Shown in pieces: positions 11,725 to 60,554 of a stretch of 64,000 nucleotides of DNA. This stretch comes from Asterias rubens. Taxonomy: Eukaryota. Position numbers and translations under genes: made by a program. The notes under the pieces are model-generated. The model saw nothing but the letters and a program-made list of their open reading frames with translations, had not been told where the DNA came from and ran no database searches. The DNA lies in NCBI RefSeq assembly GCF_902459465.1, contig NC_047075.1:13764001-13828000 (forward strand), in the 5' to 3' direction. Each line of letters opens with the position of its first letter. Positions within the stretch are counted from its first letter, which is position 1.

Positions 11725-11725
11725 A

Positions 11726-11743
11726 TGGTGTCAGAAGTGGGAT
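11726..11743 (+). promoter_or_regulatory. Primer-binding site, complementary to tRNA-Leu(CAA) 3' end
   Basis: TGGTGTCAGAAGTGGGAT, 1 nt after the LTR-terminal CA. tRNA identity is from recalled metazoan tRNA-Leu sequences. Confidence 0.85.
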
Positions 11744-30414: not shown

Positions 30415-30835
30415 GAAACATAAGCCGGGCTTGACTCGGGATTGAAAGCGTATAAGCGTAGCTGAGTAGCTGCGTAGCTTGGAACGTAATCATTTCTTTT
30501 AGAACGTAAGCATATTTTAGAACATAAGCGTAGCTGGGTATCTTGGAACGTAAACGTAGCAGCGTATGGAACGTAAGCGTAACTTGACTCAGGATTGAAA
30601 GCGTACCTTTTGTTATTATAGCATAACTTGAAGAAACGTAAGAGTATCGTGTAATTTAAGCATAGCTGAGAACCTGTGTAGCTTAGAACGTAACCTTATC
30701 TTGTGGTCCGTAAGCATATCTTGGAATGTAAGCGTAGCTGGGTATCTTGGAACGTAAACGTAGCTGCGTATGGAACGTAAGCGTAGCGACTCAGGATTGA
30801 GAGCGTACCTATCGTTATTATAGCGTAACTAGTGA
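30415..30835. repeat. Complex tandem repeat built from GGAACGTAAGCGTAGC-like subunits, higher-order period of about 205 bp
   Basis: TAAGCGTAGCTGGGTATCTTGGAACGTAAACGTAGC...GACTCAGGATTGA.AGCGTACC occurs at about 30524 and about 30729. Confidence 0.8.
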
Positions 30836-35169: not shown

Positions 35170-35385
35170 TTAAATGATCTCTTACGCTCATTTTGCAAAT
35201 CGTCAGTATCATTGTTTTTAACAACACTTTTATGCGGAGGCTTTTTAATTTTCCACATTTGTGTTGGACATGATTGGATGCTCCAAACCATCTGCATCAC
35301 AGAAACTATATTGTTTATGATCTCTATCTCTATGAAAAGTTTTACATTTGGTAGCAGGCAGGGACCAAGGAGAGTAGGCCCTGTA

Positions 35386-35880
35386 CATAGAGCTATATAT
35401 ATTGACTAGAGCGCTAACACCTCGTTATACACGCACTAAAGTTTTGAAGCCATGTGGGTGCATCCTTGTTTATGTACAAACCAATACAAAAGCTTGAAAT
35501 TTTGTACGGCAATTGTACGGCTATTTGCATGATCGTGCGTCTGTTCTTTTTTATGTGCCATCGAAGCAAAAAATGCAGTAAATGTGAACGCACAATCTGC
35601 TGATCAGCGCCCAAACTGCGAGTGTCATCTGCGTCATGATTAAAAGGTGCGTTTACTTTTTTTAGTACGGCAATCAAGTCGAAGTTGCGGTTTTCATAGC
35701 GCGGACGTACGCGAGTGGACAGCTGCGTCCGTATACGCACACGCAGAATGTAAAATAATCGCGGCAATGTGTGTTCTCTTAAAATTCCGAATTCACGCAA
35801 CACATCAAACATGTCTGCGCCCAGGGTGGCTTCAAAATGCAGAGCAAGTTAGCGCTCTAGTCAATATATATAGCTCTATG
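35386..35880. mobile_element. 495-bp MITE with 33-bp TIRs and 8-bp TSD (hAT- or P-type)
   Basis: TIR CATAGAGCTATATATATTGACTAGAGCGCTAAC, perfect at both ends. TSD GCCCTGTA at 35378-35385 and 35881-35888. Confidence 0.92.
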
Positions 35881-37861: not shown

Positions 37862-40800
37862 CAATTAATGCCTCCAAAATGTCTTTGGGAATCTTTCTCA
37901 TTGTTCCCATTGTTGTTAACTCCTCATTCGTGAAGAAAGCATTAACTAGGGTACAAGCCATCTTAGTACCTGATTTTCCAGCTTTTCTCATGGCTGAAGA
38001 GATGTTTAGCGGGTACACATAGACCCGAGTTCCCGGAGTTAGTTCAATCATCTGAGCGAATCAAAAGAAAAATGAACAGCTCAGTAAAGTATGTGGTGTA
38101 ATAACCTTTCTGTGAGTTGGGATTGTTCTGAAAAGAATCATTTGTTTTCAACTCAACAGCAAATCATAACGATGGCCTCAATCAGGAATTATCTATATTT
38201 TCACTGAAGTAGCTACTCCTGTGACTGTAGAATGAAAAGCTGAAGGTTCTTTCAAATCTACCAATTGTGTTAATTTGTACACTTACTTGGTGCATTGCTG
38301 CAATGTCTGGATGTAGTTTTCCAGGCCGAGGTGCAGTATTTGCGTTGGTCGATGTACTTCCTGCATACAGATAAAAGTTCATAAAAACAGGAACACTGTA
38401 GATATCACAATTATAAACTGAACTCAAACACTATTTTCAGAAAAGATGTTTTGCTTATTGCTGTTTTTATACCTCTGTGTTGATGACTGTAGGGTGGAAA
38501 TGAAATGTTATTACAACAGCTGTATGGCTTCAATTCGTTGTTACAAAAAGTCATCAAAAAGATGAAAATCGTGCAATACACACGAAAACCAAGTGTTTTG
38601 TTTTTATTTTTGCAAGTCGCCCATCACAAGGCCAGATGGCCACTCAAGAGAGGGCTACAAATCAACTGTTTTCCAGGGCTGTTGCCACCTACTCCTGGAG
38701 CTGAAACAGGGTTGCCCCTTTTAGAGTTTGTAAGGTTTTGTAGGCTTTATAGGTATCATCTAAGCGGAGCCTGGCTGAAAGAGCACAATGTACTACCTCC
38801 CCAACTTTTACGAAGCAATTATGGTTAAGCACACAAGTGGTATGACCCGGATTAAAACCCTTACTCTGTCGCATGCTACACCAGAGCATGGGTCCGGTGA
38901 GCTAAACCGCTCGGCCATGCCTCGAACAACATGACAGGGCAATCTATGATCGCAAAAGGTCATTTTCACAAAACCTGTGATGTAAAGGTAAAAAGACAAA
39001 GATTTCTTTCAAAATTTTTCAAAAAGCCTAATTTCTGGCAAATAGCCAAAAAATAGCAATTTTGTTTAACGTTCACACATGATCGGATCCCATTCTCTGC
39101 TGGAGTTTTGCATCGCCATATTAATTTGTGCTATTTAAGGAAAATATTTCAACTTACTCTGATAGTGGGCAACCTGATCCCCAAGGTTATAGCAGGTCTC
39201 TTGAAGACTTCTTATCTTTTCTTCCAAAGATAAAATTTGATCGTACAGTGTCAGGTTCTCGTCTTTTAACTTCCTCATTTCTATGTTTAATGCACATAAT
39301 ACAAATAAAACATGAAGTTAAGTTAATGCGCAAAATTTAATGCATTCCACGCCTTGAATGCAACACAAGCACAAAACAAAATTGATTAGGGGAACACATA
39401 CAGAACAGGTTTGAAAAAATACCTTCCCCATTAGCGTTGATGAATGATGTTCGTCTTGGACATTTGCCACCAACTGTAGGCCGATCTCTATCGTTCTGTT
39501 TGTCCAATCTAGTTTTGTTTTTTGTTTTTCGAGCTCAGCCAGGTAAGATCGCTCTTTTTCAAGGTATTTGGAAATGTTACCTATGTGAGTTGATATAAAA
39601 AAAATGACAACAAACTTGAGTTTAAAGTGCATCAGTTAAACAAATTTCATGATCACAAACATTTTTTACATGCAAGAGCCATTGCATGTCCATAAAAGAA
39701 CTTTTGGATTGAGCATATTAAACATTTTACCATGTGCTTAAAATTGATAAGCACAAAACAAAATTGGTTAAGGGAACTCATACAGAACAGGTTTGAAAAC
39801 ATACCTTCCTCATTAGTGCTGATGAATGATGTCTGTCTTGGACATTTGCCACCAACTGTAGGCCGATCTCCATTGTTCTGTTTGTCCAATGTAGTTTTTT
39901 TTTTTTTTTTTTCGAGCTCAGCCAGGTAAGATCGCTCATTTTCAAGGTTACCTATGTGAGTTGATATAAAAAGCCAACAACAAACTTGACTGTAAAGCGC
40001 ATCAGTTAAAAAAAATTTATGGTCACAAACATTTTTAGTATGCATGAGCCTATTGCATGTCCATGATCAGGCATATTGAACACTTTGCAATTAAATTGTT
40101 TTTACAAGTTAAACTCAAAATGTGCTTAGCCTATACCTTTTACTTATTATTACTTGTATACTGGGCAATGGTTTGAAATAAAACAAGGGCTTGTTTAAAT
40201 GAATTCATTAAAAATAGTCTAAAATGTACACCAACGACATGGTCTTCAACATGGTCTTCAGCACTCTGTTCAGATCCCTCTGATAAAAAAATTTGAGAAA
40301 AAAGAGTTTGCAGAACTTTTCTTCCAGTACTCCTATATTTGCAACCTGTACCACCACAAATGTTACTACAATTAACATTAAGTCAGTTACAAGCAGTTTT
40401 GTGTCAACACAAACTAGCCAAAATGATGACAGCATTTGTGACAAAACTATTTTATTCGAGGATTAAGTTAAGTACATTAACAGTAAACTTTCATACTGCA
40501 AATGCATTAAATTTACATGTTTTGTTTTCTTTAATTAAAAATTACAAAAGATTTGTATGATATATTTACCGCTATCAGTATCACTGTCCTGATTTTGCCC
40601 GAGCTGTTCAAAGAGGGCCTTCTCCTTCACAATGTATTGCGAGATGTTACTCGGGCCAGCTTTTAAACATAAAAATGTTTACTGTTATTTTGAATTTGTA
40701 AGAATTTTTTCTCATCTATTGCACTCTTTGTACATGTACATGTACATGTTGTCTTGAAAAAATAGGTGAGGGACTTTTTAATAATTAGGCTTTGAAGGTA

Positions 40801-44676: not shown

Positions 44677-47600
44677 ATGAGCGAAACAGTGCCAGGCAAT
44701 GGCTTACCATCAAGTAGGAAACGTCATTACAGGGACTACTTATCACAACCAAATGCTAATATTCCAAAGACTACACAATGGCGCATCAGTATTGGAACAT
44801 GTGACACAGAAGAGATGGATGGAATGGAGTCATGTATGTCACCGATGGATCAAGATATATCTGATGGAAGTGAAGTTGATACATCACAAAATTGTATTCG
44901 TTCTAGTGACCCTGATGATCAGCACAGTGAACTTTTTACAGAAGAGGATGTATCATCAATACAGTTTGATAGTGAAAGTGAAGGAGGCCAAGATGACCAT
45001 GAGAACTTTGATGAAAACTTTGTGAACTGTGAAACCATAGAGTCCGACTCTGAGGATGAAGTGGACAAACCGGATAGCACCAGCAACTTCAGTGATGCTG
45101 ATCAATACATCTACCCGGGTGCCCAAAAAACCATTGCAACAAGTATGCTTTTGACTGTAGCATTTGTATGTAGGCATGGCATTTCTGGGCAGGCACTGCT
45201 GGACCTCCTGACATATATGGAACTACACTGCATGGCTGGTAATCTGTGCGCTGGCTCAATGAAGTTGCTGCGACAGTTTTTCAGAAGTAGCAGAGCACCA
45301 ATGGAGTGTCATTTTTATTGTTCTAACACTACATGCAAACTTTATTTTGGGAATGACAAGGACAAAGTACCAAGCGTATGTAAAGCTTGTAACTCAAGGC
45401 AAGACAAAGAATCACCACGTTACTTCCTGATGAATCCTTGATTTGTCATTGAAGAACTTTTTTGCAAGTAAGTTAAAATCATTGTACTTTGTATAATTTT
45501 TATCTTAATAACTATTTTTTTCTCAGTGTGAAATGCAGGTGTAGTGTGCTAGTTTGATGTACATCAAACATGGCCCTGTGGCTCATAAAACACACCACAT
45601 ATACTGGAAAGAGCAGTGGAAACTAAAACCAATGTTTGAAACTTTGTATTAGTCCTATAATTTTACTGAAATTGTTGTAAGAAGCAGACCTGTTCACAAT
45701 ATACAATTGAATAATACTACATGTATGAACATGTATGCATTAGCATGTCCAAGAAAAAAAATAATACTTGCTCCATAAGATCAAGTGATAAAGGTTCAGA
45801 AAACTTTATATTACAGTACTACAGTGCTTTTCATGAACCAGTTTATTTGATGCTGAGATGCTCTACTGAACACTTTTTGTACTTAACACTGAGAAACTTG
45901 AGAGCACTCATGACTTTTAATGACTTGTAATAGTTTTTGAAAGAAAAATATCGGCAGATAAAAAAGGAAATGCGATCATTTCCTATTTTTACACCAACAA
46001 AAAAGTAGCTGACAGTTTTAAAACTTTACCCTCTTGAACATAAACATTTGCATGGGTGCTTAAAGAGAGTAAAGCTTAATTGAATGGATTGTATTTTTGA
46101 TACATTTTCTTTAAGGAGTTGAAGTGACCCTACCAGATGGATGTCAGAAGATTGTAAAGGCAATTGTGTTGAGCTCTGTGTTTGATTCTCCAGCACGCTG
46201 CCTCTTTCAGAACTTCACTCAATTCAATGGCTATTCAGGATGCCCGTTTTGTTTGACTGTGGGGGAGACAGTACAAACCAGTGCACGAGGCCACACACAA
46301 ACCTACCCATTTGATTTGAATTCTGATACAGGTCATGGACCTCCAAGGAAACATAAGAATACGACAGAATTTTTGCAAGAGATGCATAATCACATGCTGA
46401 GAACAGGGAAAAAAACATTACATGGTGTCAAAGGGTACAGTTGTTTTATTTTTGTTAAGAAGTTTGATATAATCCGTAGTGTAGCATTATACTATGTGCA
46501 TGGTGTTATGCTTGGTGTTGTAAAAATGTGCACAAAACTTTGGTTTGACAGTTCGTTTAGAGGGAAACCATTCAGTATTTACAAAAAGTTGAAAGATGTT
46601 GATATCAGACTTATGAATATTAAACCTCCTAACTGTATTACAAGACCCCCAAGACCCATTTCCTCACACATCAAATTCTGGAAAGCTTCCGAATATCGGT
46701 CATTTGTACTTTATTATTCAATTCCCTGTCTCTGGGGAATTTTACCATCAGAATTCTTTGAACATTTGCTTTTACTTGTGCAAGCTTTACTTCTACTTCT
46801 GTCAGACAGTATAAGTGTGATCGACTTGAAAACTGCAAATACACTTCTAAAGCTTTACTGTTTGAAGATTGGTCAACTGTATGGTGCAAGGTATCGTACC
46901 TCTAATGTACATAGTTTATTACATTATACCGATAAGGTACGTGATCTTGGGCCACTTTGGTGTAACTCTTGCTTTCCATATGAGGATTTTAATGGGGATA
47001 TTTCTAAATTGTTTCATGGCACAAGAGGTGTACAAACGCAGGTTTTGTCAGCTGTCGCAATCAATCAGCAAATACCACTTTTAGCTCTAAATTTAAAAAA
47101 AGGGTCACAAGAGTTTGAATTTTATAACGCGATGGTCTCACATGGCAGAAACATAAAACTAAGGGAAGAGCTTTCTGAAGGGACTTATCTAGTTGGTTCA
47201 TTTACGGCAACACATGACTCTGGTGATTATTTTGCAGTTTTATTTCAAAAATATGGTCAAATTAAAAATACAAAGTATTTCAAAAGAGTTTCTATCAGGA
47301 GAGTTGTATATCATAGTAAAAGTTATAAAATAGTAACAAAAAGAAACAGTTTCACCATAATGTTCCAGGCGAATGACAAACAAATGTTTGGTATGGTGTG
47401 TATATATGTAAAGTTTTTCCTGCAATGTGTAAACCAAACTTCCTGTTCAGGTAAATGTAAATGCAAATTGCCTAAATATGCCGCCATTGTTGAAGGGTTG
47501 AAGCCAGATGAAACGCTGCAGTTGACAGGTAATACCCTTAGCAATACTGTAACCAAATGTATTGTGCCAGTTGTAAAAAATTACAGAAAGTTGGTGGTGG

Positions 47601-47701
47601 TAGAACTCAAAGATATCCTTCAGAAATGTGTCTGGTTAGATGTTGGGCTAACACAAAATAACTTAATTGCTGTTTTTCCAAACACTTATGAGAAAGACTA
47701 A
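44677..47701 (+). pseudogene. CMC/EnSpm (Transposase_21-like) transposase, at least two exons, defective
   Basis: Exon 1: acidic N-terminus, RHGIS...LDLL, HFYC..C. Exon 2 from about 46116: FDSPAR..QN..QFNGYSGCPFC, HGVKG, YVHGVMLG (usual D-x-x-H Asp replaced), FWKASEYR, NVHSLLH, LGPLW..SCFPYE..NG. Exon 1 has a stop at 45439-45441, and the expected nTDG..WP..ELP segment is not visible. Confidence 0.85.
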
Positions 47702-48589
47702 GGGTATGTACTAGGCGTTTTATTAAAGCTCACTTATTATGTTACAAACTGTTGACACTACTACCGTACACCTTTTATTTAAAATTGGAGGATGTTTCTA
47801 CAATTGTTAATGAGTGCTCATCATTTATAATCTTAATTTTATAAGCTGTCTGTCTAAATTTTGAAACTTTCTTGTAAAACCTAAACTTTGGCTAAAAATA
47901 CATGTAGGAGAACTTCAGTTCTTTATTAACAAGTTTTTGTAACTCTGATTTTTTGTATGCTTTTATGTGACCTCACATGTATTTGTCAAGCATGTATGCA
48001 AATAAGTTTTTAGAAGTTTTAACTGTTGTAGACTCGAATAACACCTCAAAAGCAGCAATATTGTAGGACAGACCCTATGCGCGTGAAGCAAGTATCAATG
48101 AAGCACGCAGCATTCCTGGTTTGATTTTTATGGCACGCACATGCCCACAGACGCTTTGTTGTAAGTCAGACAGTTGAGTCGTATAGTCATTTTTGATACG
48201 GTCTAAATATGAAACATTTACCTGTCATTTTCTTAACATTTGATAATTGTTTGTAATTTTTCTGAGGATTGTTTATTTACATGTAGCATACCCATAAACC
48301 ACACAACAGGTCAGAATATAATTGTTTCACAGATTCCTTATAACCAGTCCAGCATCATTACAGTATACAATGAACCTTGTCGTATAATAAAACGGATAGT
48401 TTTGAGACTTTGTGCAAAAAATATAATCTGTGGTTTCATCTCAGGTTTTCATTAAGTTAAAATCAGAACATACGTAAACCAACATTTGACTTATTGTGTG
48501 TTAATGATATCACACTTCACATATATTATTTGCGTTAAAAAGTTAATGCAAACTCATTTAACATTTTCAGCTGATTTTTGTATGAGGGT

Positions 48590-48964
48590 TAGTCATGCAT
48601 GTAGGATTTAATTCTGTTTGGTACAAATTTCAGAAAACAAGACAGCAGGATTCAGAGGAAAATTTCAAAATCAACCTGAAAACAGGACCACAGGCTTCAG
48701 AAAAATTCAAAAAAAAACAGTCAGAAAATAGCACAGCAGGCTTCAAAAATTTTTTAAGTCCCCCCAAAACAGTAAGAAAACACAGTGACTTGGGAAAAAC
48801 AGTGAATGAAAAACAGGGTGTATGAAAAACAGGGTGAAAACAGGGTCTAAACTTGTAGTATTTCCATGCAAACAGGATAAAAACATGTTCTTATCCTGTT
48901 TTTGAAGACAAAAACAGGATAAAAACCTGTTTGAAACAGACAAAAAATAGGATTTTGTACAGCG
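48590..48964. mobile_element. Right terminus of the CMC/EnSpm element with subterminal AAACAGG repeats
   Basis: Ends ...GGATTTTGTACAGCG (CGCTGTACAAAA on the minus strand, resembling CACTGTAAAA EnSpm ends), preceded by many AAACAGG(A/G)T units. Confidence 0.6.
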
Positions 48965-48997
48965 ATTTCCGCGAGGGTATCTCCGTACCTCTACAAA

Positions 48998-49015
48998 TGG
49001 CGACGAGGATGGGAT
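48998..49015 (+). promoter_or_regulatory. Primer-binding site complementary to tRNA-Ser(GCU) 3' end
   Basis: TGGCGACGAGGATGGGAT, 2 nt after ...CTACA. tRNA identity is from recalled sequences. Confidence 0.85.
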
Positions 49016-49250
49016 GCTGAGTCACAACGCTGTGAGAGACCTAGTCAGCAAAGACACAGGCATAACTGAGGACACTTATTGAGCATGTGGAGACGAGTTG
49101 GCTTAGTATACCTGCAAGACCTATTAGATGATTAGGTAGGCCCTATATATATACCTATTTCTATGGTTCAAAATTACTGTTCAAAGCAATATTTTCCCTC
49201 TGTCTGGGCTTCTCCTGTTGTATAAATATATTTTGTTTTAAAGTGCAGTC

Positions 49251-50276
49251 ATGGCACTCCCAGACGGAGTAGCTGAGGCCATTCTTCAGTCAAACCAAGC
49301 GTTAGCTGAGACACTCGCAGGAGCATTTCAAAATCTTAGATACCAGAGAGTGTCTACTATTAAGTTGACAAAATTTTGTGGCAGTCCAACGAAAGTCGGA
49401 GACCAGACCATAAAAGAATGGCTCAGTGATTTGAGCACTTATGTACGACAGGCGGGGCTCAGGGATGTTGAGAAATTGAGCACAGCTCTGGATTTTTTAG
49501 GAGGTGTAGCTAAGGAAGAGGTTTTGTGTACACCTATCCATGATAGAGATGATTTCGAAAAGCTTTCAGCCCTCCTGGTGAAGCGATTCGGTTCACCAGA
49601 GAGTGTTCAGTCTTTAACTGGTACCCTATACTCCCGCACTCAACTACATGGTGAAACTTTGGCTGATTTTAGTCGGGCCCTGATAAGGCTACATGATCGA
49701 ATGGAGAATGTAGCAGTTAACGCGCAGGAAAAGGATGCCTTAGCCCAACTCAGGAAGAGTACTCTAAAAGAACAATTTGTGAGAGGTGTACTTGACATAT
49801 CAGTCAGACGCGAGCTGCGCAAATTGCTTTTAGGCCAGGCGGATCTCAGTTTCACTGATTTGCGTGAGTTTGCCTTAGAGTTGTTTCCGGACGCGGAACA
49901 ATTCTGCGAAGAAAGAAGCTCTGTTGATTGTAATACTGCTTTGGCGTATAAGGCTGCTGCAGCCCCCAGCGACTCTAAAGTTTCTGACTTACTTGAAAGC
50001 CAAAAGCGACTTGTTGATACTATGCAAAAACTAGTTGAACAACAGACCAGTATGACTACCAAAATGCAGAGTATGTCTGAGGGTATAGAGAGTCTGGTAG
50101 CTGCACAGCGTAGAAGCCAAATAAAGTGCACATTCTGCCACAGAACTGGGCATACAACAGAAAACTGTTTCAAACGCAAACGACTTGAAAATAAGAAAGC
50201 TAACGAACAAGCAGACAAACCACAGGAAACCGAGAAGCCGGGAAATGTGAATCCTCCGCCACAGAGAGCACTGTGA
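49251..50276 (+). CDS. gag: Gypsy 2 Gag, intact 341 aa
   Basis: KLTKFCG...EWL capsid region, LYSRTQ..GETL..FS, and CCHC knuckle CTFCHRTGHTTENC. Confidence 0.9.
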   Translation: MALPDGVAEAILQSNQALAETLAGAFQNLRYQRVSTIKLTKFCGSPTKVGDQTIKEWLSDLSTYVRQAGLRDVEKLSTALDFLGGVAKEEVLCTPIHDRDDFEKLSALLVKRFGSPESVQSLTGTLYSRTQLHGETLADFSRALIRLHDRMENVAVNAQEKDALAQLRKSTLKEQFVRGVLDISVRRELRKLLLGQADLSFTDLREFALELFPDAEQFCEERSSVDCNTALAYKAAAAPSDSKVSDLLESQKRLVDTMQKLVEQQTSMTTKMQSMSEGIESLVAAQRRSQIKCTFCHRTGHTTENCFKRKRLENKKANEQADKPQETEKPGNVNPPPQRAL

Positions 50277-50282
50277 CGGGGG
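50240..50282 (+). promoter_or_regulatory. -1 frameshift signal: G GGA AAT plus downstream stem-loop
   Basis: The heptamer is in the gag frame and pol is open in the -1 frame from this point. CCGCCACAG pairs with CTGTGACGG (8 of 9) starting about 9 nt downstream. Confidence 0.7.
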
Positions 50283-53200
50283 CAGATAATACTAAGGTGC
50301 CCATGGTTCAGATGCCATTTGAGACTGAGGTGTTAAATTGTGAAAATGGGAATGATAATGTGCTACTAAGCGAAATAAACCTTAATGCAACGGAAGTTCG
50401 CCGTAAACTCTTAGCCAAATCCCCCACCGCGTCTGTAATTGTAAATGGCATCCCGACTAGGTGTTTACTTGATACGGGGGCAGAAACCTCATTATTGTCT
50501 GCTAAATTTTACCGCGAGCACATCAAAAACACCACAGAGAGACTGCAACCAGTGGGTACACTCATAAAGCTCATAGGAGCCAATGATTTAGAAATTCCCG
50601 TCCAAGGTTACATTGAGACCTCATTGGAGGTATTTGGCTATGAGTTTAATGCTAGTTTTTTAGTGTCTAAAGACAGCGAGTCACCTGTGAATACTGGTCG
50701 CTAAGAGCATTGTCCTGTGTTGCTTGGTTGCAATATATTGAGACACATAGCCTCGAGATTAAATGCAATTAGCACACTGCAATTAGAGCCAGATTGGGAT
50801 CTCGCACTACGCTGGGTTCAGACCAATATATCTGTTGATCAAACTAGTAGTAGCACTGGTCAGTGTGATACAAATGTAGAGTTATGTACAGACTCACGAA
50901 TTGTCATTCCCCCAGGAATGATTAACAAAGTAAAGTGTGTCTTAGGGGGGACCCCACCGACATCAGAGGGTAAAGAATATTATATTCAGCCAACTCCATT
51001 GTGCATGTCAAACAATGGAAGCTTTAGACAAGTCCATTCAGGGCAAGATAGTGATCCATCAACTTTGTGTTATGTACTTGAAGGTATTGGGCAATTTAAA
51101 GGTGCTTTTAGTGAGATATACATAGCAAATGCTAGTACAGAGCCCTTAGTAATTCCAGCTTTTACTCAGGTCGCAGCTATGACTGCAGTTACCCCTGTAG
51201 AGCAGATTTTTCTGGAAAAGAATTCAGATGGGTTTGATGTATCCGTGCACCGTGTTGTCACAGATTTTGTACATGTAGATGAGTCTATTGATTCAAGTAA
51301 TGTTGATGATGCTGATTGTTCTGTTGATCCTGGGAAGAAAGTGCAGGAGTCTGAATCGGAATTGTTTACATTCTCTGATGGGTCAAGTTTCGCTTTACCG
51401 CCTGGTCTTACTCTAAAACACCTTGCTTACCAAGATGCTAGCGCAGCTGCTGAATTAATAAGAAAACATTCAGATGTGTTTACCAGTCACCCATTTGATC
51501 TGGGGTATTGCGACCTCATTCCACATGAAATCAGGTTGCACGATGACACGCCAGTTAATCTACCTTATCGGCGAGTCATCCCCATTCAGATGGGGGAAGT
51601 TAAACAGTTGTTACAAGATCTTTTGGATCGGGGCATTATTCGTCGGTCATCGAGTCCCTATGCCAGCCCGATCATGTTAGTACGCAAAAAGAATGGCCAA
51701 CTGAGACTGTGTATAGACTATAGATGCCTCAATGCGAAAACAGCAAAGGACTCATTTCCTTTGCCTCGGATAGAAGAGACCCTTGAGGCACTCGGTGGGG
51801 CAAAAGTGTTTTCCTCTTTAGACATGGCTCATGGGTATTTTCAAGTTGCGATGCATGCTGACTCGATAGAGAAAACTGCAATAAGAGTCCCCTGGGGACT
51901 TTATGAGTTCCTCCGCTTGCCACAAGGTCTTATTAACAGCCCTAGTACGTTTCAGCGGATAATGGAACACATATTTGGGGATTTGAATCTATCTGAGTTG
52001 ATTTTATATCTAGATGATCTGTTGGTTTTTTCGTCCAGTATTGGGGATTACATTCAGCGGCTCGAGAGAGTTTTCATGCGTTTTAAGCAGTTTGGCCTAA
52101 AGCTTAACGGTTCCAAGTGCCAGCTATTTAGATCATCTGTATTGCATTTGGGACATGTGGTTGATAGCAATGGTGTGTCAGTGGACCCTGATAAGACCGA
52201 ACGTGTGAGGTCTTGGCCTACCCCAATAAGCACCGCGCAACTTAGATCATTCCTAGGCTTAGCATCCTATTATAGGCGGTTTGTGCGAGATTTCGCCAAA
52301 ATTGCCTCGCCGCTCCATGTTCTCACCGGTAAGACCCAAGAAAAAGCAGGGAAGGCCAACACCCCACTCGTTTGGTCTACAGAGGCAGACTTGGCATTCA
52401 CTACTCTAAAAAAGGCACTGTGCGAGGCACCAGTATTATCCTACCCTTGTTTTGGGCATGATTTTGTCTTAGAGATAGATGCTTCGGCAAAAGGGCTACG
52501 GGCTTGTCTGTGTCAGGCTGATGATGATGGTAAGCTCCATCCAGTGGCCTATGCGAGCAGAGGCTTGCGAGGGGCGGAGAAAAACTACACAGAGCTGTCT
52601 AGTTTCAAACTTGAATTTCTGGCCCTCAAATGGGCCGTGTCAGAAAAATTCCGCGACTACCTACTAGGTCACCATACTATAGTTTGGACAGATCATAATC
52701 CCTTGTCTCATCTGAAGACAGCAAAACTCGGGGCCACTGAACAACGCTGGATGGCCCAGTTGGCACCCTTTGATATTGAGATCAAATATAGATCAGGCAA
52801 ATCAAACCGATGTGCTGATGCACTCAGTCGCTATCCTTATGATACTGACAAAGTAGTTTCTGATGCACAACAGTGTAACCTTAGTGTGGAGGGGACGCAA
52901 TTGAGGTCCATTCAAGTTTCACAGACATTGCTTGAGAAAGGTTCCAATGACATACCGGTACCGGACGAGTGCACAGGTTCTTGGTCAACGGTTTTCCCCT
53001 CATTTTCACATGCCGAATTGGCATTGCTCCAACAAGAGGATAAAGCCCTCAAAGTGGTTTGGAGTTGTTGGAAAAGACGTTTGGAACCTGGTCAGGAAAT
53101 GAATAACAATGAACCTCTTACACCTGAGGCTAAGAGCTGGTTGAAAGAGTGGCATAGGTTGATTGAGGGCAAGGGAGTACTTTATAGGTCAATTTCTGAC

Positions 53201-54540
53201 ATTGGACTGGGAACAGTCCCTCAGCTTCTTGTTCCGCTCAAACTTCGCCAAATGATCATAGAGGCAGCCCATGATAAATGGGGACACCAGGGAGTTAACA
53301 GAACACTGGCGTTTATCAAACAACGCTGTTATTGGCCTGGTATGACTGGTCAGGTTAGAAGTCATATTCAAAATTGTTTTCAGTGCACTGTGACAAAAAC
53401 TACTACCCCGACGGTACGCCCACCATTTACTAGCATTCCAGCCACTAGAGCGCCTTGCGATAGATTTTGTAAAACTAGATGCAGGCAAGGGCAACATTGA
53501 GGATGTTCTAGTTCTAACAGACTCATTCACTAAATTTGCTCAGGCCATACCATGTAAAAATCAGACTGCACCCACAGTAGCCCGTGCATTAAGAGATCAC
53601 TGGTTTTGTCACTACGGGATCCCAGCGCAAATTCATTCAGATCAGGGAAAGAACTTTGAAAGTCAGTTGATCAGGGAACTTTGTTCTTTGTACAATATCA
53701 CAAAGACTCGAACTACAGCATACCACCCGCAAGGGAACGGTCAAACTGAGAGGTTTAATCGGACCCTTTGTAGCCTAATCAAATCCCTAGATGCTAAAAG
53801 TTGGTATTCGTGGCCAGGTAGAGCTCCTCCCACATTTAGTGTTCATATATAACACAACCCCCCACAGCATCACAGGCTATATGCCATACACTTTAATGTT
53901 TGGTCGTGATCCAGTTGTCCCTATAGATCAACTATTGAGTAACACTCGGTCTGACTGGAGTGAGCCTGCGATAAAGAAGCAAGCACAGATAATTAAGGCG
54001 ACACACCAGCTCGTTAAAGAGCGCCTTACCAAGGCAGCCGCCGCAAATAAGAGAAATTATGACAAATGCGCAAGAGCTGGAAAAATTTCTGTTGGTGATC
54101 GAGTTCTGGTTAAACAAATGGCACACAAAGAGAGGCATAAGCTTGCTAACATCTTCTATGAACAGACATATGTAGTGGTGCAATGTAATGTAGATGGGGA
54201 CCTTTTCCTTGTTCGTCCTGCAGAAGGTGGAAATTCTAAGTACCCTAAAAGAGTCAGAGGACCCATTGCAAGGGTTACCAGGTCTGTTTTCATCAGACCC
54301 ACCTCACTCTGAACCCCTACTAGATTCAGATGACAGTTGGGTTATTACCTATGACCAAAAGCGGCCTGCGCTCCCACATGATGCACAACCAAATGGGCAA
54401 AAGGAAAGAGTACCATCTCGTACAAATGCGCCAATCCAACCTTCTAGTCATGCCCTCTCTGAGAACACAGCGGGGCCCCGGCGCTCACAACGTCTTCAAG
54501 CAAAACGTTGGGGGAAATGGCCAAATAGTATTACCTAAAT
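50240..54540 (+). pseudogene. pol: Gypsy 2 pol (PR-RT-RH-IN), disrupted
   Basis: PR LLDTGAETS; in-frame TAA at 50702; RT LCIDYR.LN, LDMAHGYFQV, LYLDDLL; RH EIDAS, YASRGL, KLEFLAL, WTDHNPL; IN AHDKWGHQG..C..C, HSDQGKNFE, GQTERFNRT. Frameshifts near 53430 and 53815. Confidence 0.95.
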
Positions 54541-55028
54541 GGTTCATTATCTCTCGGAACACTGAAGTCGTTCCATTGTTTGATTGTTTGTTTAGTAGGC
54601 AGATTATTTGCTTGTCAGCTAGTCGAGTTAGAAGACATATTTGAGTTGTGATAACTTATTTTTAAAGGTGTGATGTTAATGATTAATAAACTGGTTTTTT
54701 TTGTGTATTGACAGTTGCCGGACAGCCAGTTGAGTTTGAGGGTTGCCTCTTGAAGGTGTAGGTTCCTTACCACCTCTACCTCTCTGCTGGTATAGCCGAA
54801 CCCAGACCTTTCCGTTTGATTGGACTAGTAGGAGGTGCTTGGCAACAGAGACTGCCTCCTGTAGGTGTTTGGTACGCTATCCTACTCTGTCTCCTTGCAC
54901 TTTCGCTGTCTCTTTAATAGAAAGGTGACTATACATATTTTTACTTTTTCAATAATTAGTGCTTCACAGTTTTCTGAGCACATGATTTCATTGTTTTCAT
55001 TTTGTGCTACACTATTCGACATTATACA

Positions 55029-55622
55029 ATGTCTGCGCAGATATCGGTATTTTTGTATGGCCATTCTTTTCCTGCGCGTTTAATGCGGCAAGCTCGAGAA
55101 CAGGGCAAAAATGCCAAATCCTTGCTTGGTTTGAGTGACTATTTTAATATTTTTGTAGAAGGGCATCCGGGACTTACCTATCGAAGGATTTTAGGTAATC
55201 TCCCTCATTACTTCTCTGAACTCAAGTCCAAGAGTTTTGATATTTTGCTTATCGATTTGGGCACAAATGATTTGTGTAATCCTGACGACCCACCAGAAAT
55301 CCTTTTTCAGCATGTAGTACAATTTATCGACCAGCTCAGGGCTCATGACATTTCTCCGCAGAAGGTTGTGTTTTTGTCTGTGATTAAGCGGTTCTCTATT
55401 TCCCGTAGAGGCCAGGTTTCATTGACAACCTTTAATCACAGGGTCAAAAAGTTTAATAATCTACTTGCCTCCAAGCTCAAAGATTACCCTGATATGGGGT
55501 TATACAATCAACGGAGGCTTAACCACCCTCGTTTTCTGCGGGATGGTTGTCACCCCAACCCAGGGGGAATGCAGAGGTATTTCCGAGGGGTCAAGGAAGC
55601 TATTTATCGTTGTAAATTGTAA
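55029..55622 (+). CDS. SGNH/GDSL-family hydrolase (esterase), 197 aa, accessory ORF of Gypsy 2
   Basis: All four SGNH blocks are in order: FLYGHSF (Ser), GHPGLT (Gly), DLGTNDL (Asn), RDGCHP (Asp-x-x-His). Uninterrupted ORF. Confidence 0.88.
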   Translation: MSAQISVFLYGHSFPARLMRQAREQGKNAKSLLGLSDYFNIFVEGHPGLTYRRILGNLPHYFSELKSKSFDILLIDLGTNDLCNPDDPPEILFQHVVQFIDQLRAHDISPQKVVFLSVIKRFSISRRGQVSLTTFNHRVKKFNNLLASKLKDYPDMGLYNQRRLNHPRFLRDGCHPNPGGMQRYFRGVKEAIYRCKL

Positions 55623-56429
55623 GGTATTACTGTGATACTACGTGCATTTTTGAATGACTGTTATGCCAAACATTTGTTTTGATTCATTTTTACTGAGACT
55701 GCAAGAGTGCTGGATCTATCAAATTTACCCTTAGTAGGTTTTTGGGACGAAACCCATTATTGGTTTCCTGTACTTGCGCAGTGTCACATTTTTAAGTAAA
55801 CCAGTTGATGATTCTAGTTGAGATATTTGTGGATGCATCCACAACTCGTTTTTTATGTAATTTGCATACTGATGTTAGATGCACATCAGGCTTTGTGCAT
55901 TGTATTACCATTATTTGCTTTTAAGCTATGTAAACTTCCAAATGTGAGTTTATTGTATGCTTATATTATTTTGTATGACATATTGATTGTATTTTGTAGT
56001 AACTATGATTGTGTCATTGGCGAGGACACACATCCAGGAAATTGTGGGAAGGTTTATTGTCGTGCAGAGGGCCAAAGGTTTCACACACAGGTAGAAGATC
56101 ACTCTGTGATGTATTCTTTCTAAAAATGATGCGAAAGACTTTGAAGTTGAAATTAACTTCCTGTGTCTACGAAGAAAGTTTATTATTTAAATCATGCTTA
56201 TTTTGTCCACTGCAGATCATTCGAAGCTTTGTTTCTGACTGGTTGATGGAAAACTGAGTAAAGAAGAAAAAAAATAAATCTAAAAACAAATCTGATAGTT
56301 TTGTGTAGGTTACTGTTTTTTTCCTTGTTAACAATTAGAAAGTTAAAAGTAAAGTTCCTTGTGTTTGTTAATAGGATTATTGCATCTTATGGATCGTTCG
56401 AGGGCGACTGATCCTTTAAGCAGGGAAAT

Positions 56430-57300
56430 TGTGGGGAAATGGACCCATTATTATTTGCAACTTTATTTAAGGTCAGTAGAGGGCGGTGTTTCCCGCTAAG
56501 TCATCATTTTCGCGGACTGGGCCTCTTGATACCTATTTACCGTCATAAAGAAGTTTCTTTTCGCAACACTAAAATAGTGCAACGTTTTATTGAAATAACT
56601 ACTTTTATCAAGATATTGTATTGAAAAGTTGTTCCATATTCAGACTGTGAGTAATGGAACTTAATCTAACCACAAATGTATGATTCTTGGACGTGTGAAT
56701 GTAAAATAAATTAAGTGTTGTGGTCAGCGTAACAATTACGCTATTATCAAGCCAAGAATCTGTTTTTTCCCCGTGTTCTTCATCTTCAACCTTGTCAGTA
56801 TTTTATCATAGACCGTCAGATTATCTGGTGAGTTTTATATTACGTTTTAAACCGATTTAAAAGGTGCATTTTCACTGTCGAAACAATGAGGGTCGTATCA
56901 CTATCATGAGACATTTTTGATTGCTTTTATATGAAACTACATGCACATGTACACGTATACACAGAACAAGGGTTATACGCATAGTAATGGCGTTGCCATT
57001 GAGGATCATGTATTCTGAGTTACAGTATACACTCCCTGTACTTATATGTATTAAATGTACTACATGTACCTGTAACTAGTCTCTATTTATATATTGTATT
57101 CTCCTGTCCTTGTACACAGGCGGTCTTTTTGTATCAATGGTTTGTGGATGCAAATAAAGAAAATCAGAAGATCAAATATTGAAGAAGTGTCTGCTGACTG
57201 ATGAATGACTGGACTCAGCAATTCCTTTTTTTATTAATAAAGAGGGGACCAGGGCCAAGGACTCCCTCAAGTGGCAGGGGGTTATCTCCGTACCTCTACA
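56430..57300 (+). repeat. 3' LTR of Gypsy 2 (left boundary inferred)
   Basis: Preceded by hairpin GGATC..TCGAGGGCGA..GATCC and purine tract AAGCAGGGAAA. TGT start, AATAAA at about 57152 and 57235, ends CTCTACA. Alternative starts at about 56042 or 54757 cannot be excluded. Confidence 0.7.
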
Positions 57301-58610
57301 TTTATGTTTACATAGGGGTCTTTGCACCAGGCGCGCCACTACTCTATACTGCCCCTCTTCGGTTTCTTCGCAAACTAGACTGAAAACTGTGACTTTCACT
57401 TTGAATAATTCTTCAAAGTGATGCAGGTCTTCTAAACAGACACCTTCAGTTGGGCGCTTTTTCATTTCTTTGGTGTATCTATCTACGCGGTACATGGTGC
57501 GGGTTTCTAGGGCGGTCGCAGAGTAGCCTTGTTTTAGCGCGAGACATCTAAACAAACAAAAATTATCCCGGTATCTTGCACCGGAGTTACGACTTCTGAT
57601 TAGATTGTTTAAACCCACATTGTTTGAGATGTAATCGGGTAGTTCATGTGGCGCTGCACCTATGTAGAACAAGGGCATTTTGTTTGCATAAACGGTGACG
57701 TTAGTGATATCGGCAACGACCCACTTTGTGTCTGGACGCGTGTGTAGGGTGTGTTGTAGTACGTCCATATCGCATACTTTTTGGACGAAGTTTTCAAAAT
57801 CGTCTTCTGAAGCTATAGTGATGGGGTGGGTTAAAAAAAGGCCGTTGTTAAAACTAGAATGGTAATAACGCAATTCGCCAGACTCTATATTTCGTAAAAC
57901 AAACCCAAAGGACAGGTTCAGTTTTACTCTACACGAAAAAGTTGGGAAAATACCCCTTAACCCCTCGACCAGTGGTACGCCATTTGTGAGCAAGGGTTGG
58001 CGCCGTCCCCAAACGTAAATTGTAAACATCTTGAGTCTGACAGCGGTACAGATAATGGGTCCTAATACTACCCCAGTTTCTACGATAAAGAGATATCATC
58101 TCATTATCCCTATTGTTATTATTTTGGGGAATCGAAAACGCGATTGAGTCTTCGGGAACTAGACTGGCGGCTTGGGGCGGCGCAGGTTGTGAATTATGTG
58201 GAAGAGGGTCATTTCTCTGGGGTTGGCGAGAGTCGTGTCTTTTTACATGGCGCTTAAAACTTACTGAGTTGGTAAATGTTTTTCCACATGTGGTGCAATC
58301 CCTCTTATACCCAGAATGAACTTCTTGGTGCTGTTTTAGAGTGTATTTTCGGGCACATGACTTTCCACAAGTATCACAAGTAAACCTATTACTGGCAAGA
58401 CCGTTAGTTTTACTTAAATACGACCTATTACTAACCGACTTTTTCTTCTCACGCCGGAATGTAGGCTCTTTGTCAGGGGTTCTCCGTCTCTTCGATCTTG
58501 CAATCTTCTTTCCACGTGACGGCGCCTTGTCAGGTGTTCTCCGTCTCTTGGGTCTCACGAAGTGTGTTCTTTTGCCAGATGATACATTTGCACCCTTTCC
58601 TTTCTGCGGC
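57301..58610 (-). pseudogene. Polinton/Maverick-like gene: basic repeats, two C2H2 fingers and protein-primed PolB N-terminal region; frameshifted and truncated by Gypsy 2
   Basis: CDTCGKSC...LKQHQEVH and CTTCGKTF...FKRHVKRH; after a frameshift near 58000, KLNLSFGFVLRNIESGELRYYHSS.NN...RPDTKWVV..ITNVT.Y..K...IG...LPDYI.NN...DNFCLFRCLAL, which I recognise from invertebrate Polinton pPolB N-termini. Confidence 0.7.
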
Positions 58611-59402: not shown

Positions 59403-59760
59403 GGTACTGAAACTTTGTTTCGCCAAGGGTGTCACTATACAGCGCTGATGATCGTGTGGACTGTGCAGCGCTGATGGTATGTGCACGGGTGCAGCGCCGA
59501 CGATGTTTACCCGGTGCAGCGCCGATGATGTGTGAGTGGTCTACCGACTGACACCGCCGTTTTACCCCAAAAACATTTCGTAAAACAAAACCCAAAAAAT
59601 AATTAAATAAAAAAAGAATAAAGAAAGAAAAAAAAAACAAGATGCAAGAGGGCAGCAAGAAAATAATTAAATTAAATTAAAACGCTAGTTCAACTAAACA
59701 CATAACACTAGTCCATACACCTTGTAGACGCTTCCGTCAAAGTTAATTGTGTAATAAACA

Positions 59761-59977
59761 CAAACATTGGCGCCTTCCTTCGTAATTACACAAACAAAAG
59801 ACACTTCTCCGTTCACCTGGTCACACATCCGATGAACCTATTAAAGTCTGTAAAAACAAACATTGGCGCCTTCCTTCGTAATTACACAAACAAAAGACAC
59901 TACTCCGTTCACCTTGTCACATATCCGTTGAATTTAATCACTTAATAAGTTAAGACATAAGCGCCTTCCTTCGTAAT
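59761..59977 (+). repeat. 96-bp direct repeats (2 full plus 1 partial)
   Basis: GCGCCTTCCTTCGTAAT at 59770, 59866 and 59961. Confidence 0.9.
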
Positions 59978-60554
59978 ACATAACACCAAATACAATGATG
60001 ACCCCGGTCTACTAAGACGGGATGGCACTAGAGACAAAGGGCGAGATAAATAAATTTGAATCTGCATACACGCATTTACACGAACACATTATAATCCTCG
60101 ACCAACCCTTTTTATTTCTCCACGACGGCTTGCTTGTCAGACGTCGTGGAAATCAACCGCTTTGTTTTCACTTCGTGAAAATACAACCGAGACGTAGACG
60201 TCTCGGTTGTGCTGGGTGGTTTTGTGATGTGGCGCTTCGTGATTTAAAAAAATCACTAACACACCGCGAACTGAGTACAAACAATAACGGTTTGCACTCA
60301 GTTACACTGTCGTGAGACAACTACTGCGGTGTTTTTCAAACACCACTCAACATAATGCCATGCATAATGTTAACCCCCCTCCCCCACGTATCAGCCCTTC
60401 GGGCCAAACCCCTCACCACTGCGTGGCTCGCCCTAATTACATTAGCCCACCTCCACCAGGGTCGACACACCTCACTTCCAGTCCGGCAAAACAACATTGA
60501 AAACAAGCCATATTTGCTTGCCGGACTGCGATTAGGTGTGCGTTCCTTCTTCAT

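What the first reader, a model, noticed from the sequence alone, without database searches (positions are those of the whole stretch)
54900..55622. Intact SGNH hydrolase carried by an LTR retrotransposon in the env position
Seen: a 197-aa ORF between integrase and PPT with the full S-G-N-H catalytic set, uninterrupted although pol has a stop and frameshifts. Acceptor-like tracts lie upstream (TTTTTACTTTTTCAATAATTAG, CTTCACAG near 54960-54970) and a donor-like TAG|GTAGGC lies at 49136. Known: SGNH esterases occur in ORF1 of CR1/L2/RTE-X LINEs and in Ngaro tyrosine-recombinase elements, where lipid or membrane interaction has been proposed. Inference: a Gypsy lineage using an esterase instead of Env, for example for membrane or particle trafficking or deacylation. 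I cannot say whether this is already catalogued in Repbase.
Basis: partly seen in the sequence, partly recalled or inferred. Interest (0 to 1): 0.75.

Follow-up and report, generated by a model that had tools for sequence, protein, structure and literature searches.

The report
Esterase gene carried by Gypsy retrotransposon
A dead copy of a Gypsy-type jumping gene carries, where retroviruses keep their envelope gene, an intact small esterase gene that is a conserved part of a large family of such elements in marine animals; a similar arrangement was reported in rotifers in 2017.

Summary
Window 55029-55622 (+) encodes a 197-aa SGNH/GDSL hydrolase (Pfam 5e-11) with Ser13, Gly48, Asn80, Asp172 and His175. 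It lies between the pol stop (54538) and the polypurine tract (56418).

It belongs to the element. At least eight divergent lineages show gag-pol-SGNH in the same order, mostly with intact pol. The pol and SGNH trees agree within the main clade. The catalytic residues are kept in 102-108 of 111 full-length relatives (median 27% identity). Synonymous sites are saturated while 71% of residues are retained.

The window copy is dead. Pol has three frameshifts and one stop, and only about 21 nt of the 5' LTR remain. An unbroken ORF3 here is expected by chance (P about 0.57).

The protein has no signal peptide or membrane segment and is basic. It is therefore an accessory cytoplasmic esterase, not an Env substitute in function.

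An LTR retrotransposon with a GDSL ORF3 is already published for bdelloid rotifers (PMC5408684). This looks like a new, large, marine (probably echinoderm) member of that kind.

The parts
48975..48995 (+). Remnant of the 5' LTR (last ~21 nt only); the rest of the 5' LTR is missing from the window
   Evidence: It is 95% identical to 57280-57300, the end of the 3' LTR. No other match to the 3' LTR occurs anywhere in the window.
48998..49016 (+). Primer-binding-site-like sequence starting TGGCG, 2 nt after the LTR end
   Evidence: It is in the same position as a 20-nt sequence that is nearly identical in L001, L008, L020 and L015. The window version differs after the first 8 nt. The primer tRNA was not identified.
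49017..49250 (+).
   Evidence: A GTGAGAG motif also occurs in the leaders of L001 and L008. No RNA evidence is available.
49251..50276 (+). gag, intact, 341 aa
   Evidence: It is 41-46% identical to the gag of L008 and L001 over its full length and has the same length as L008 gag.
50273..54538 (+). pol (protease, RT, RNase H, integrase), broken by three frameshifts and one in-frame stop
   Evidence: Pfam finds RVP, RVT_1, RT_RNaseH, RT_RNaseH_2 and Integrase_H2C2. It is colinear with the intact pol of L008 (1437 aa) and L001 (1426 aa) from end to end. Domain bounds: PR about 50417-50572, RT about 51680-52159, RNase H about 52373-52771, IN zinc domain about 53231-53401. No dUTPase or chromodomain is present.
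   Evidence: The motif occurs twice here and nowhere else in the window (0.02 expected). It is conserved in L024 and L008. The acceptor-like tracts are not conserved.
55029..55622 (+). ORF3: 197-aa SGNH/GDSL hydrolase, intact (stop codon included)
55623..56417 (+). Non-coding stretch between ORF3 and the polypurine tract
   Evidence: No conserved ORF. The 86-aa ORF that follows ORF3 in L001 has no match here.
56418..56429 (+). Polypurine tract (AAGCAGGGAAAT)
   Evidence: The motif AAGCAGGGAA-N-TTGT is conserved at the same place in L001, L008, L015 and L020-L022.
56430..57300 (+). 3' LTR, 871 nt, TGT...ACA ends
   Evidence: The start is fixed by the conserved PPT/TTGT junction. The end is fixed by the match to the 5' LTR remnant. 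Its first ~100 nt resemble the L001 LTR start.

Best explanation
ORF3 is a genuine accessory gene of a clade of Ty3/Gypsy LTR retrotransposons of marine animals. The host here is probably an echinoderm. It encodes a small, basic, cytoplasmic SGNH esterase with a complete Ser-His-Asp triad and oxyanion hole.

Shown:
- The gene has travelled with gag and pol through long divergence.
- It is under strong purifying selection on the catalytic residues.
- It lacks any secretion or membrane signal.
- The window copy is a dead, 5'-truncated insertion whose ORF3 is intact simply because it is short.

Inferred:
- The enzyme acts inside the cell on an acyl ester, most likely a lipid or another membrane-associated substrate. 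It would help the particle or ribonucleoprotein associate with or cross membranes, as proposed for the esterase of CR1/L2 LINE ORF1 proteins and for the GDSL ORF3 of rotifer Vesta elements.
- It is translated from a subgenomic RNA, either spliced or started inside the element. The twice-repeated conserved motif in the pol-ORF3 spacer is a candidate control element for this.
For: Identity. Pfam GDSL hit 5e-11. AF2 model pLDDT 94 with an SGNH fold and TM about 0.7 to PAF-AH Ib and Bacteroides acylhydrolases.

Part of the element. The order gag-pol-SGNH on one strand is seen in L001-L006, L008-L011, L012, L013, L014, L020-L021 and the loci of P0016 and P0195. PPT and PBS motifs bracket the same unit. 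Families have 11-16 members at 90% or more identity spread over Mb-scale contigs.

Co-divergence. Pol and SGNH NJ trees give the same two subclades. SGNH identity (47-54%) tracks pol identity (54-57%) and exceeds gag identity (37-46%).

Selection.
- Ser 108, Gly48 108, Asn80 107, Asp172 102 and His175 106 out of 111 full-length relatives with median 27% identity.
- Between the window and L024, pN is 0.18 and pS is 0.75, which is saturated.

Size of the family. 1461 cluster representatives at E<=1e-3 and 337 at E<=1e-10, nearly all stand-alone proteins of about 200 aa.

Not Env-like. Maximum KD(19) is 0.65-1.53 in ten members, a median of 12 residues precede the Ser, and net charge is +5 to +14.

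Analogy. [quoted passage not shown] GDSL ORF3 occurs in Vesta elements (PMC5408684).
Against: - No substrate, activity or transcript has been observed, so the lipid or membrane role is by analogy only.
- The solved LINE esterase did not appear among sequence-profile hits (E<=1) or among the top 50 fold hits. The analogy therefore does not rest on close kinship.
- One relative (P0008, locus L007) has no recognisable gag or pol within 10 kb upstream. Distant relatives (L016-L019) sit on contigs too short or too degenerate to show an element.
- No splice site is conserved convincingly.
- The host assignment rests only on the best named hits to transposon proteins.
Confidence: 0.8

Rival explanations
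1. The ORF is private to this copy. It would be a host gene or another insertion that landed between pol and the 3' LTR and is unrelated to the element family.
For: The window copy is rearranged at its 5' end, and other transposons lie nearby (a Transposase_21-like ORF at 46124-47701).
Against: The same ORF sits in the same place in at least eight lineages with 23-65% pol identity, most with intact pol. No repeat or target duplication flanks the ORF.
Confidence: 0.01
2. At this locus the ORF has been kept by the host as a domesticated gene while the rest of the element decays.
For: Gag and ORF3 are intact while pol has four breaks and the 5' LTR is nearly gone. A solitary relative without pol exists (L007).
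Against: At pol's break rate, ORF3 escapes damage with P about 0.57. A 98%-identical protein (P0001) exists on another contig, which fits a young multicopy family. An out-of-frame upstream ATG at 54982 overlaps the start. There is no evidence of an orthologous locus in other species.
Confidence: 0.04
3. The protein works as an envelope-type or receptor-destroying surface enzyme, like the haemagglutinin-esterases of some enveloped viruses, and lets particles leave or enter cells.
For: It occupies the env slot. SGNH esterases serve as receptor-destroying enzymes in some viruses (general knowledge). A 2026 survey found no env-carrying Gypsy elements in echinoderms (PMC13524379), so the slot is otherwise empty there.
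Against: There is no signal peptide, no membrane segment and no sequons in the window protein. The catalytic Ser is at residue 13. No haemagglutinin-esterase of an animal virus is among the top 50 hits in the viral fold library; the hits are phage tail enzymes and giant-virus SGNH proteins.
Confidence: 0.04
4. The fold serves mainly as a basic nucleic-acid- or membrane-binding module, as in the SGNH-like OSK domain of Oskar, and catalysis is secondary.
For: All members are basic, with K+R exceeding D+E by 5-14. One distant relative gives a weak OSK-domain hit (P0101). The LINE esterase has low turnover and binds liposomes without needing its active site (PMC3905857).
Against: The triad and oxyanion residues are kept in 92-97% of 111 relatives at median 27% identity. 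That is hard to explain without catalysis. The OSK domain lacks these residues (PMC3905857).
Confidence: 0.1

Closest known systems
GDSL esterase/lipase ORF3 of Vesta LTR retrotransposons of bdelloid rotifers (Rodriguez, Kenefick and Arkhipova 2017, PMC5408684)
   Same: A Ty3/Gypsy-like LTR element with gag, pol and a third ORF between pol and the 3' LTR. That ORF encodes a stand-alone SGNH/GDSL hydrolase with intact catalytic residues and no coiled-coil or transmembrane domain. An auxiliary, possibly membrane-related role was proposed.
   Different: The rotifer lineages are described as rotifer-specific and as encoding a dUTPase in pol. No dUTPase is found here or in the relatives. The hosts here are marine, and named hits point to echinoderms. 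Block I reads G-H-S rather than G-D-S in 103 of 111 members. Whether the two esterases share one origin could not be tested, because no Vesta sequence could be obtained with these tools.
Esterase domain of ORF1 proteins of CR1, L2 and RTEX LINEs (Kapitonov and Jurka 2003; ZfL2-1 structure, Schneider et al. 2013, PMC3905857)
   Same: A retroelement-borne SGNH hydrolase with a conserved active site and a basic surface. A role in membrane targeting was proposed.
   Different: In LINEs it is a domain inside ORF1p, upstream of pol and joined to a coiled coil. Here it is a separate ~200-aa protein downstream of pol. The solved LINE esterase was not among the PDB sequence-profile hits (E<=1) or the top 50 fold hits.
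SGNH hydrolase ORF of Ngaro tyrosine-recombinase retrotransposons (Goodwin and Poulter 2004; Xenopus families, PMC9210276)
   Same: A separate SGNH ORF placed after the enzymatic genes of a retroelement, with unproven function.
   Different: Ngaro elements use a tyrosine recombinase and split direct repeats. This element has a DDE integrase, LTR, PBS and PPT. Kinship of the two esterases was not tested.
Texim SGNH hydrolases of fish, also reported in amphioxus, Oikopleura and sea urchins (PMC4021074)
   Same: Small animal SGNH proteins related to PAF-AH and CR1 esterases, with a patchy distribution and an association with transposons (Helitrons) in fish. Echinoderm members are listed.
   Different: Fish texim genes have introns and no linked reverse transcriptase. 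Whether the echinoderm 'texim-like' sequences are in fact ORF3s of this Gypsy clade is an open lead that was not tested.
PAF acetylhydrolase Ib catalytic subunits and Bacteroides GDSL acylhydrolases (PDB 1wab, 1fxw, 4iyj, 4hf7)
   Same: They are the best structural and sequence matches: a single-domain SGNH fold of about 200 residues, TM about 0.7.
   Different: Only 14-20% identity. They are cellular enzymes that are not linked to mobile elements.

Membership tests
SGNH/GDSL hydrolase superfamily | Block I with the nucleophile Ser (G-x-S) | tested here: met
   G11-H12-S13. Ser is kept in 108 of 111 relatives.
SGNH/GDSL hydrolase superfamily | Block II Gly and block III G-x-N-D (oxyanion hole) | tested here: met
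   G48 is kept in 108 of 111. G78-T-N80-D81, with N kept in 107 of 111.
SGNH/GDSL hydrolase superfamily | Block V D-x-x-H (acid and base of the triad) | tested here: met
   D172-G-C-H175. D is kept in 102 and H in 106 of 111.
SGNH/GDSL hydrolase superfamily | Three-layer alpha/beta/alpha fold with five parallel strands | tested here: met
   AF2 model pLDDT 94 with strands and helices alternating. 176 PDB chains match at E<=1e-3, all named SGNH/GDSL enzymes among the top hits.
SGNH/GDSL hydrolase superfamily | Esterase activity | not testable with these tools
   No biochemical data.
Ty3/Gypsy LTR retrotransposon | pol domain order PR-RT-RNase H-IN with a DDE integrase | tested here: met
   Pfam domains in that order in the window (the IN core by homology to relatives) and in the intact pol of L008, L013 and L020.
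Ty3/Gypsy LTR retrotransposon | Two long terminal repeats with TG...CA ends | tested here: inconclusive
   The 3' LTR at 56430-57300 has TGT...ACA ends. Only ~21 nt of the 5' LTR are left, so this copy is truncated. Relatives assemble as circular units, as expected when two LTRs collapse.
Ty3/Gypsy LTR retrotransposon | PBS next to the 5' LTR and PPT next to the 3' LTR | tested here: met
   Conserved TGGCG... and AAGCAGGGAA motifs at the expected junctions in the window and in four to six relatives. The primer tRNA was not identified.
Ty3/Gypsy LTR retrotransposon | Target-site duplication | not testable with these tools
   The 5' end of the copy is missing.
Vesta clade of bdelloid LTR retrotransposons | dUTPase domain in pol (PMC5408684) | tested here: not met
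   No dUTPase hit in the window pol pieces, in the pol of L008, L013 or L020, or among the precomputed Pfam domains of 120 pol relatives.
Vesta clade of bdelloid LTR retrotransposons | pol groups with Vesta in a phylogeny; rotifer host | not tested
   No Vesta sequence was available. Named relatives are from echinoderms, fishes and cnidarians.
Retroviral or errantiviral Env | Signal peptide, transmembrane anchor, fusion peptide, glycosylation | tested here: not met
   Maximum KD(19) 0.65, Ser13 inside the first strand, no N-x-S/T sequons.
Retroviral or errantiviral Env | Expression from a spliced subgenomic RNA | not testable with these tools
   Only motif scans were possible. Candidate sites are at chance density and are not conserved.
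LINE ORF1p esterase (CR1/L2/RTEX) | Esterase fused to a coiled coil within ORF1, upstream of pol | tested here: not met
   This is a stand-alone ORF downstream of pol. Of the 150 best profile hits, nearly all are 190-240 aa without other Pfam domains.

The most novel reading that the evidence does not exclude
In echinoderms, a phylum in which a 2026 survey found no envelope-carrying Gypsy elements, and in other marine animals, a pool of small catalytic esterase genes is shared and exchanged among distantly related retroelement lineages. Here, pol identity of 23% sits against esterase identity of about 40%. The esterase would supply a non-envelope route for particles to cross or remodel membranes, or would disarm an acylated host factor. 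That would make it a new class of retroelement accessory function rather than a curiosity of rotifers.
Probability: 0.12. Interest if true: 0.8.

Novelty: new member of a known kind. Interest (0 to 1): 0.42.

Why it matters
Accessory genes of LTR retrotransposons are rare and poorly understood. SGNH esterases have now turned up in LINEs, Penelope-like elements, Ngaro elements and rotifer LTR elements.

This finding adds a large, old and strongly selected clade in marine animals: hundreds of 50%-identity clusters, intact elements in Tara Oceans metagenomes and in Mb-scale assemblies. Recurrent recruitment of one enzyme fold by unrelated retroelements argues for a real, still unknown step in retroelement biology that involves an acyl ester.

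The clade offers many natural sequence variants for comparative and structural study. It also suggests that some 'orphan' SGNH genes annotated in animal genomes may be retrotransposon ORF3s.

Tried and rejected
- **LTR pair around the element.** The repeat finder and self-BLAST found none. It was resolved only by comparing with relatives and by a sensitive search that found the 21-nt remnant.
- **dN/dS.** Every pair with DNA is saturated at synonymous sites (pS 0.75-0.94), so no ratio could be computed. Only pN against pS is given. Contigs fetched by exact protein identity cannot be used for dN/dS, because dN is zero by construction.
- **RNA structure in the conserved spacer motif.** RNAalifold gave -3.3 kcal/mol and no covariation. 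Rejected.
Not conserved and at chance density.
- **Rfam and tRNA scans of the window.** Nothing found, so there is no host marker and no tRNA to match the PBS.
- **Viral contig collection.** No relative.
- **Context of distant relatives P0083, P0157 and P0066.** The contigs are too short or lack pol.
- **DNA of the 98% relative P0001 and of the P0016 and P0195 loci.** Not retrievable.
- **GenBank prefix JACSEG of three related contigs.** Not found in the paper library.
- **Kinship with Vesta, Ngaro, LINE and Texim esterases.** Could not be tested, because none came back as a named hit and no sequence could be fetched.
- **The second Gypsy element in the window (10.7-21.2 kb).** Checked for an esterase and has none.
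Full report
**1. The observation**

The window holds an ORF at 55002-55622 (+). From its first ATG at 55029 it encodes 197 residues. Pfam assigns it to Lipase_GDSL_2 (E 5.1e-11, above the curated cut-off) and to Lipase_GDSL.

An alignment with 15 relatives shows G11-H12-S13, G48, G78-x-N80-D81 and D172-x-x-H175 as invariant. AlphaFold2 with that alignment gives mean pLDDT 94 and pTM 0.90, with alternating strands and helices. Foldseek finds 176 PDB chains at E<=1e-3. The named ones at the top are SGNH/GDSL enzymes: PAF acetylhydrolase Ib, Bacteroides acylhydrolases, sialate O-acetylesterase and acetyl-xylan esterases, at TM about 0.7.

The window contains no N.

**2. The element around it**

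Upstream on the same strand lie:
- a 341-aa gag-like ORF (49251-50276);
- pol pieces with protease, RT, RNase H and the integrase zinc domain.

Compared with the intact pol proteins of two relatives (1437 and 1426 aa), the window pol runs from 50273 to its stop at 54538. It is interrupted by three frameshifts and one in-frame stop. Gag and ORF3 are unbroken.

Only the longest uninterrupted pol ORF was used as a query.

No LTR pair was found by repeat search or self-BLAST. Comparison with relatives then revealed three junction features:
- A conserved junction, AAGCAGGGAA-N-TTGT, at window 56418-56432, which is the polypurine tract followed by the LTR start. It occurs in L001, L008, L015 and L020-L022.
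- A conserved 20-nt TGGCG... sequence upstream of gag in four relatives, with a diverged counterpart at window 48998.
- A sensitive search showing that 48975-48995 equals 57280-57300.

The copy therefore spans 48975-57300. It has an 871-nt 3' LTR (56430-57300, TGT...ACA) and only the last ~21 nt of the 5' LTR. It is a dead, 5'-truncated insertion.

At four breaks per 4.27 kb of pol, a 594-nt ORF stays unbroken with probability about 0.57.

**3. Is ORF3 part of the family?**

The word-based protein search returned 21 relatives of 35-98% identity, nearly all 190-210 aa. None came from NCBI-annotated proteomes.

Their genomic contexts are as follows.

| Relative | Loci | Identity to window ORF3 | Arrangement |
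|---|---|---|---|
| P0006 | L001-L006 | 50% | gag 355 aa, pol 1426 aa, SGNH 199 aa |
| P0004 | L008-L011 | 54% | gag 341, pol 1437, SGNH 197 |
| P0184 | L020-L023 | 47% | gag 340, pol 1429, SGNH 209 |
| P0016 | no DNA | 38% | gag, pol 1411, SGNH 206, on a 4.7-Mb contig |
| P0195 | no DNA | not measured | gag 477, pol 1381, SGNH 200 |
| – | L013 | 39% | pol 1585-aa ORF, then SGNH |
| – | L012, L014 | – | pol C-terminus, then SGNH |
| – | L015 | – | SGNH, PPT, LTR, PBS, gag |

Several metagenome contigs carry 119-nt terminal overlaps and are circular permutations of one unit (7930 or 8795 nt). That is what assemblers produce when two LTRs collapse. Three families have 11-16 members at 90% or more identity scattered over Mb-scale contigs.

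One relative (P0008, L007) has no recognisable gag or pol within 10 kb upstream.

**4. Selection and co-divergence**

Across nine lineages, NJ trees of pol (875 columns) and SGNH (194 columns) recover the same two subclades. Against the window, SGNH identity is 47-54%, pol 54-57% and gag 37-46%. ORF3 is thus about as constrained as pol and more constrained than gag.

Synonymous sites are saturated in every pair (pS 0.75-0.94). Non-synonymous change is 0.18 for the window against L024. No ratio can be computed, but the contrast is that of purifying selection.

I used the exhaustive profile search because the word search cannot see longer or shorter kin, and because the relation to LINE and Ngaro fusions was open. 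It found 1461 cluster representatives at E<=1e-3 and 337 at E<=1e-10. Nearly all are stand-alone proteins of about 200 residues. The few longer ones have N-terminal extensions without Pfam domains, and one hit (P0102) is a PPR-protein false positive.

In 111 full-length members with median 27% identity to the window protein, the shares are:
- Ser 108, Gly48 108, Asn80 107, Asp172 102, His175 106;
- the residue before the Ser is His in 103, so block I reads G-H-S rather than G-D-S;
- Arg121 is kept in 109.

**5. An outlier**

The L013 pol is Gypsy-type (RT, RNase H, IN zinc domain and IN core). It is only 22-25% identical to all the others. Its SGNH is 35-43% identical, no further away than the two main subclades are from each other.

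This fits transfer of ORF3 between distant Gypsy lineages, as Rodriguez et al. proposed for rotifer ORF3s. Unequal rates could also explain it. This is inference.

**6. What the protein is not**

It has no hydrophobic segment (maximum Kyte-Doolittle 19-residue mean 0.65, and 0.83-1.53 in nine relatives). The window protein has no N-x-S/T sequon. Its first strand begins at residue 5, and a median of 12 residues precede the Ser across the family. It cannot be a secreted or membrane-anchored Env.

All members are basic, with K+R exceeding D+E by 5-14.

In the viral fold library the top 50 matches are phage tail enzymes and giant-virus SGNH proteins. No haemagglutinin-esterase of an animal virus is among them.

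I had the ZfL2-1 ORF1p esterase in mind as a comparator. It did not come back in the PDB sequence-profile search at E<=1 or among the top 50 fold hits.

**7. Expression**

The 490-nt pol-ORF3 spacer aligns with that of L024 (71% protein identity). Y-rich-plus-YAG motifs occur at 1.8 per kb on this strand. An out-of-frame ATG at 54982 lies between these sites and the start codon.

The donor-like AG|GTRRG at 49136 is rarer (0.14 per kb), but it was picked after the fact. A GTGAGAG motif 34 nt after the start of the PBS-like sequence has counterparts in the leaders of L001 and L008.

What is conserved in the spacer is a ~45-nt motif, core TGCCT-YY-T-N-W-AGGTG. It is present twice, 109 nt apart, in the window (from 54744 and from 54853; 0.02 matches expected by chance). 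It occurs twice in L024 and once in L008. It shows no covarying RNA structure. It may be a control element for ORF3 and remains unexplained.

**8. Comparison with what is known**

- GDSL/SGNH ORF3s between pol and the 3' LTR were described in Vesta LTR retrotransposons of bdelloid rotifers. They have intact catalytic residues, no coiled-coil or transmembrane domains, and a proposed auxiliary role at membranes. The same paper noted related ORFs in Penelope-like Athena elements (PMC5408684; PMC6431247).
- SGNH esterases are also known in ORF1 of CR1, L2 and RTEX LINEs. There the ZfL2-1 domain is weakly active and binds negatively charged lipids through surface charge (PMC3905857).
- They are also known in Ngaro elements (PMC9210276).
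- The rotifer lineages encode a dUTPase in pol. None is found here.
- Named relatives of the window's pol and of the neighbouring transposase are from echinoderms: Apostichopus, Holothuria, Lytechinus and Asterias at 50-66% identity. The host is therefore probably an echinoderm, though this is unproven.
- A 2026 survey found env-carrying Gypsy elements in most animal phyla but not in Echinodermata, and it does not mention esterase ORFs (PMC13524379).
- 'Texim-like' SGNH sequences were reported from sea urchins (PMC4021074). Whether they are these ORF3s is an untested lead.

**9. Verdict**

The ORF is a real, selected accessory gene of a Gypsy clade in the env slot. It is not Env-like, the splice model has no support, and the arrangement has a published precedent. 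I file it as a new member of a known kind.

- No contig looked human.
- Two slips:
  - The PBS call rests only on position and on conservation among relatives.
  - These are not repeated here and nothing was done with them.

Noticed in passing
window 10698-21213: A second, unrelated Gypsy-type LTR element. Its LTRs lie at about 10698-11724 and 20099-21213 (92-97% identical). It contains a perfect 1421-nt tandem duplication (17689-19408 and 18602-20322). Its pol is about 36% identical to the L008 pol and is broken. ORFs after the integrase show only a C2H2 finger hit and no esterase.
   Followed up: partly
window 46124-47701 (+): A 525-aa ORF with no Pfam hit of its own. It is 66% identical to an Asterias amurensis protein and 33-45% identical to many marine-invertebrate proteins whose longer forms carry Transposase_21 (PF02992) and DUF1258. 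It is probably part of a DNA transposon. It lies just upstream of the truncated 5' end of the element.
   Followed up: partly
window 48560-48975: The stretch abutting the 5' LTR remnant is rich in repeated AAAACAGG units and holds a 52-nt inverted repeat (48881-48932). It may be the sequence that replaced the rest of the 5' LTR.
   Followed up: no
window 54744-54790 and 54853-54897; L024 about 213-255 and 326-370; L008 about 6446-6485: A conserved ~45-nt motif repeated in the pol-ORF3 spacer of three lineages. It has no covarying RNA structure and its function is unknown.
   Followed up: partly
window 57172-58558 (-): Two overlapping minus-strand ORFs (285 and 209 aa). The second has C2H2 zinc fingers (E 1.9e-09). 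The first overlaps the end of the 3' LTR.
   Followed up: no
window 59696-59994: A tandem repeat with a period of 96 nt, copies 83-94% identical.
   Followed up: no
window 5887-6107 and 35385-35606; also 30453-30785, 32808-33867, 39367-40050: Dispersed and short-range direct repeats (74-91% identical), probably other repeat families.
   Followed up: no
L013 4935-5125: Four tandem 43-nt repeats in the pol-ORF3 spacer of the divergent lineage. They are not obviously homologous to the window motif. The L013 pol also has about 300 extra residues between RNase H and the integrase.
   Followed up: no
L019 3406-5448: A distant SGNH relative (27% identity) is followed by three tandem 109-aa ORFs with a period of 523 nt. 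No pol lies within 3.4 kb upstream, and contig coverage is 103x.
   Followed up: no
L007 10001-10633: A 48%-identical SGNH relative has no recognisable gag or pol in the 10 kb upstream. It may be a solitary, non-autonomous or domesticated copy.
   Followed up: partly
L001, L002, L008 (ends): Metagenome contigs carry exact 119-nt terminal overlaps and are circular permutations of one unit. This fits assembly collapse of two LTRs, although one-LTR circles or tandem arrays would look the same.
   Followed up: partly
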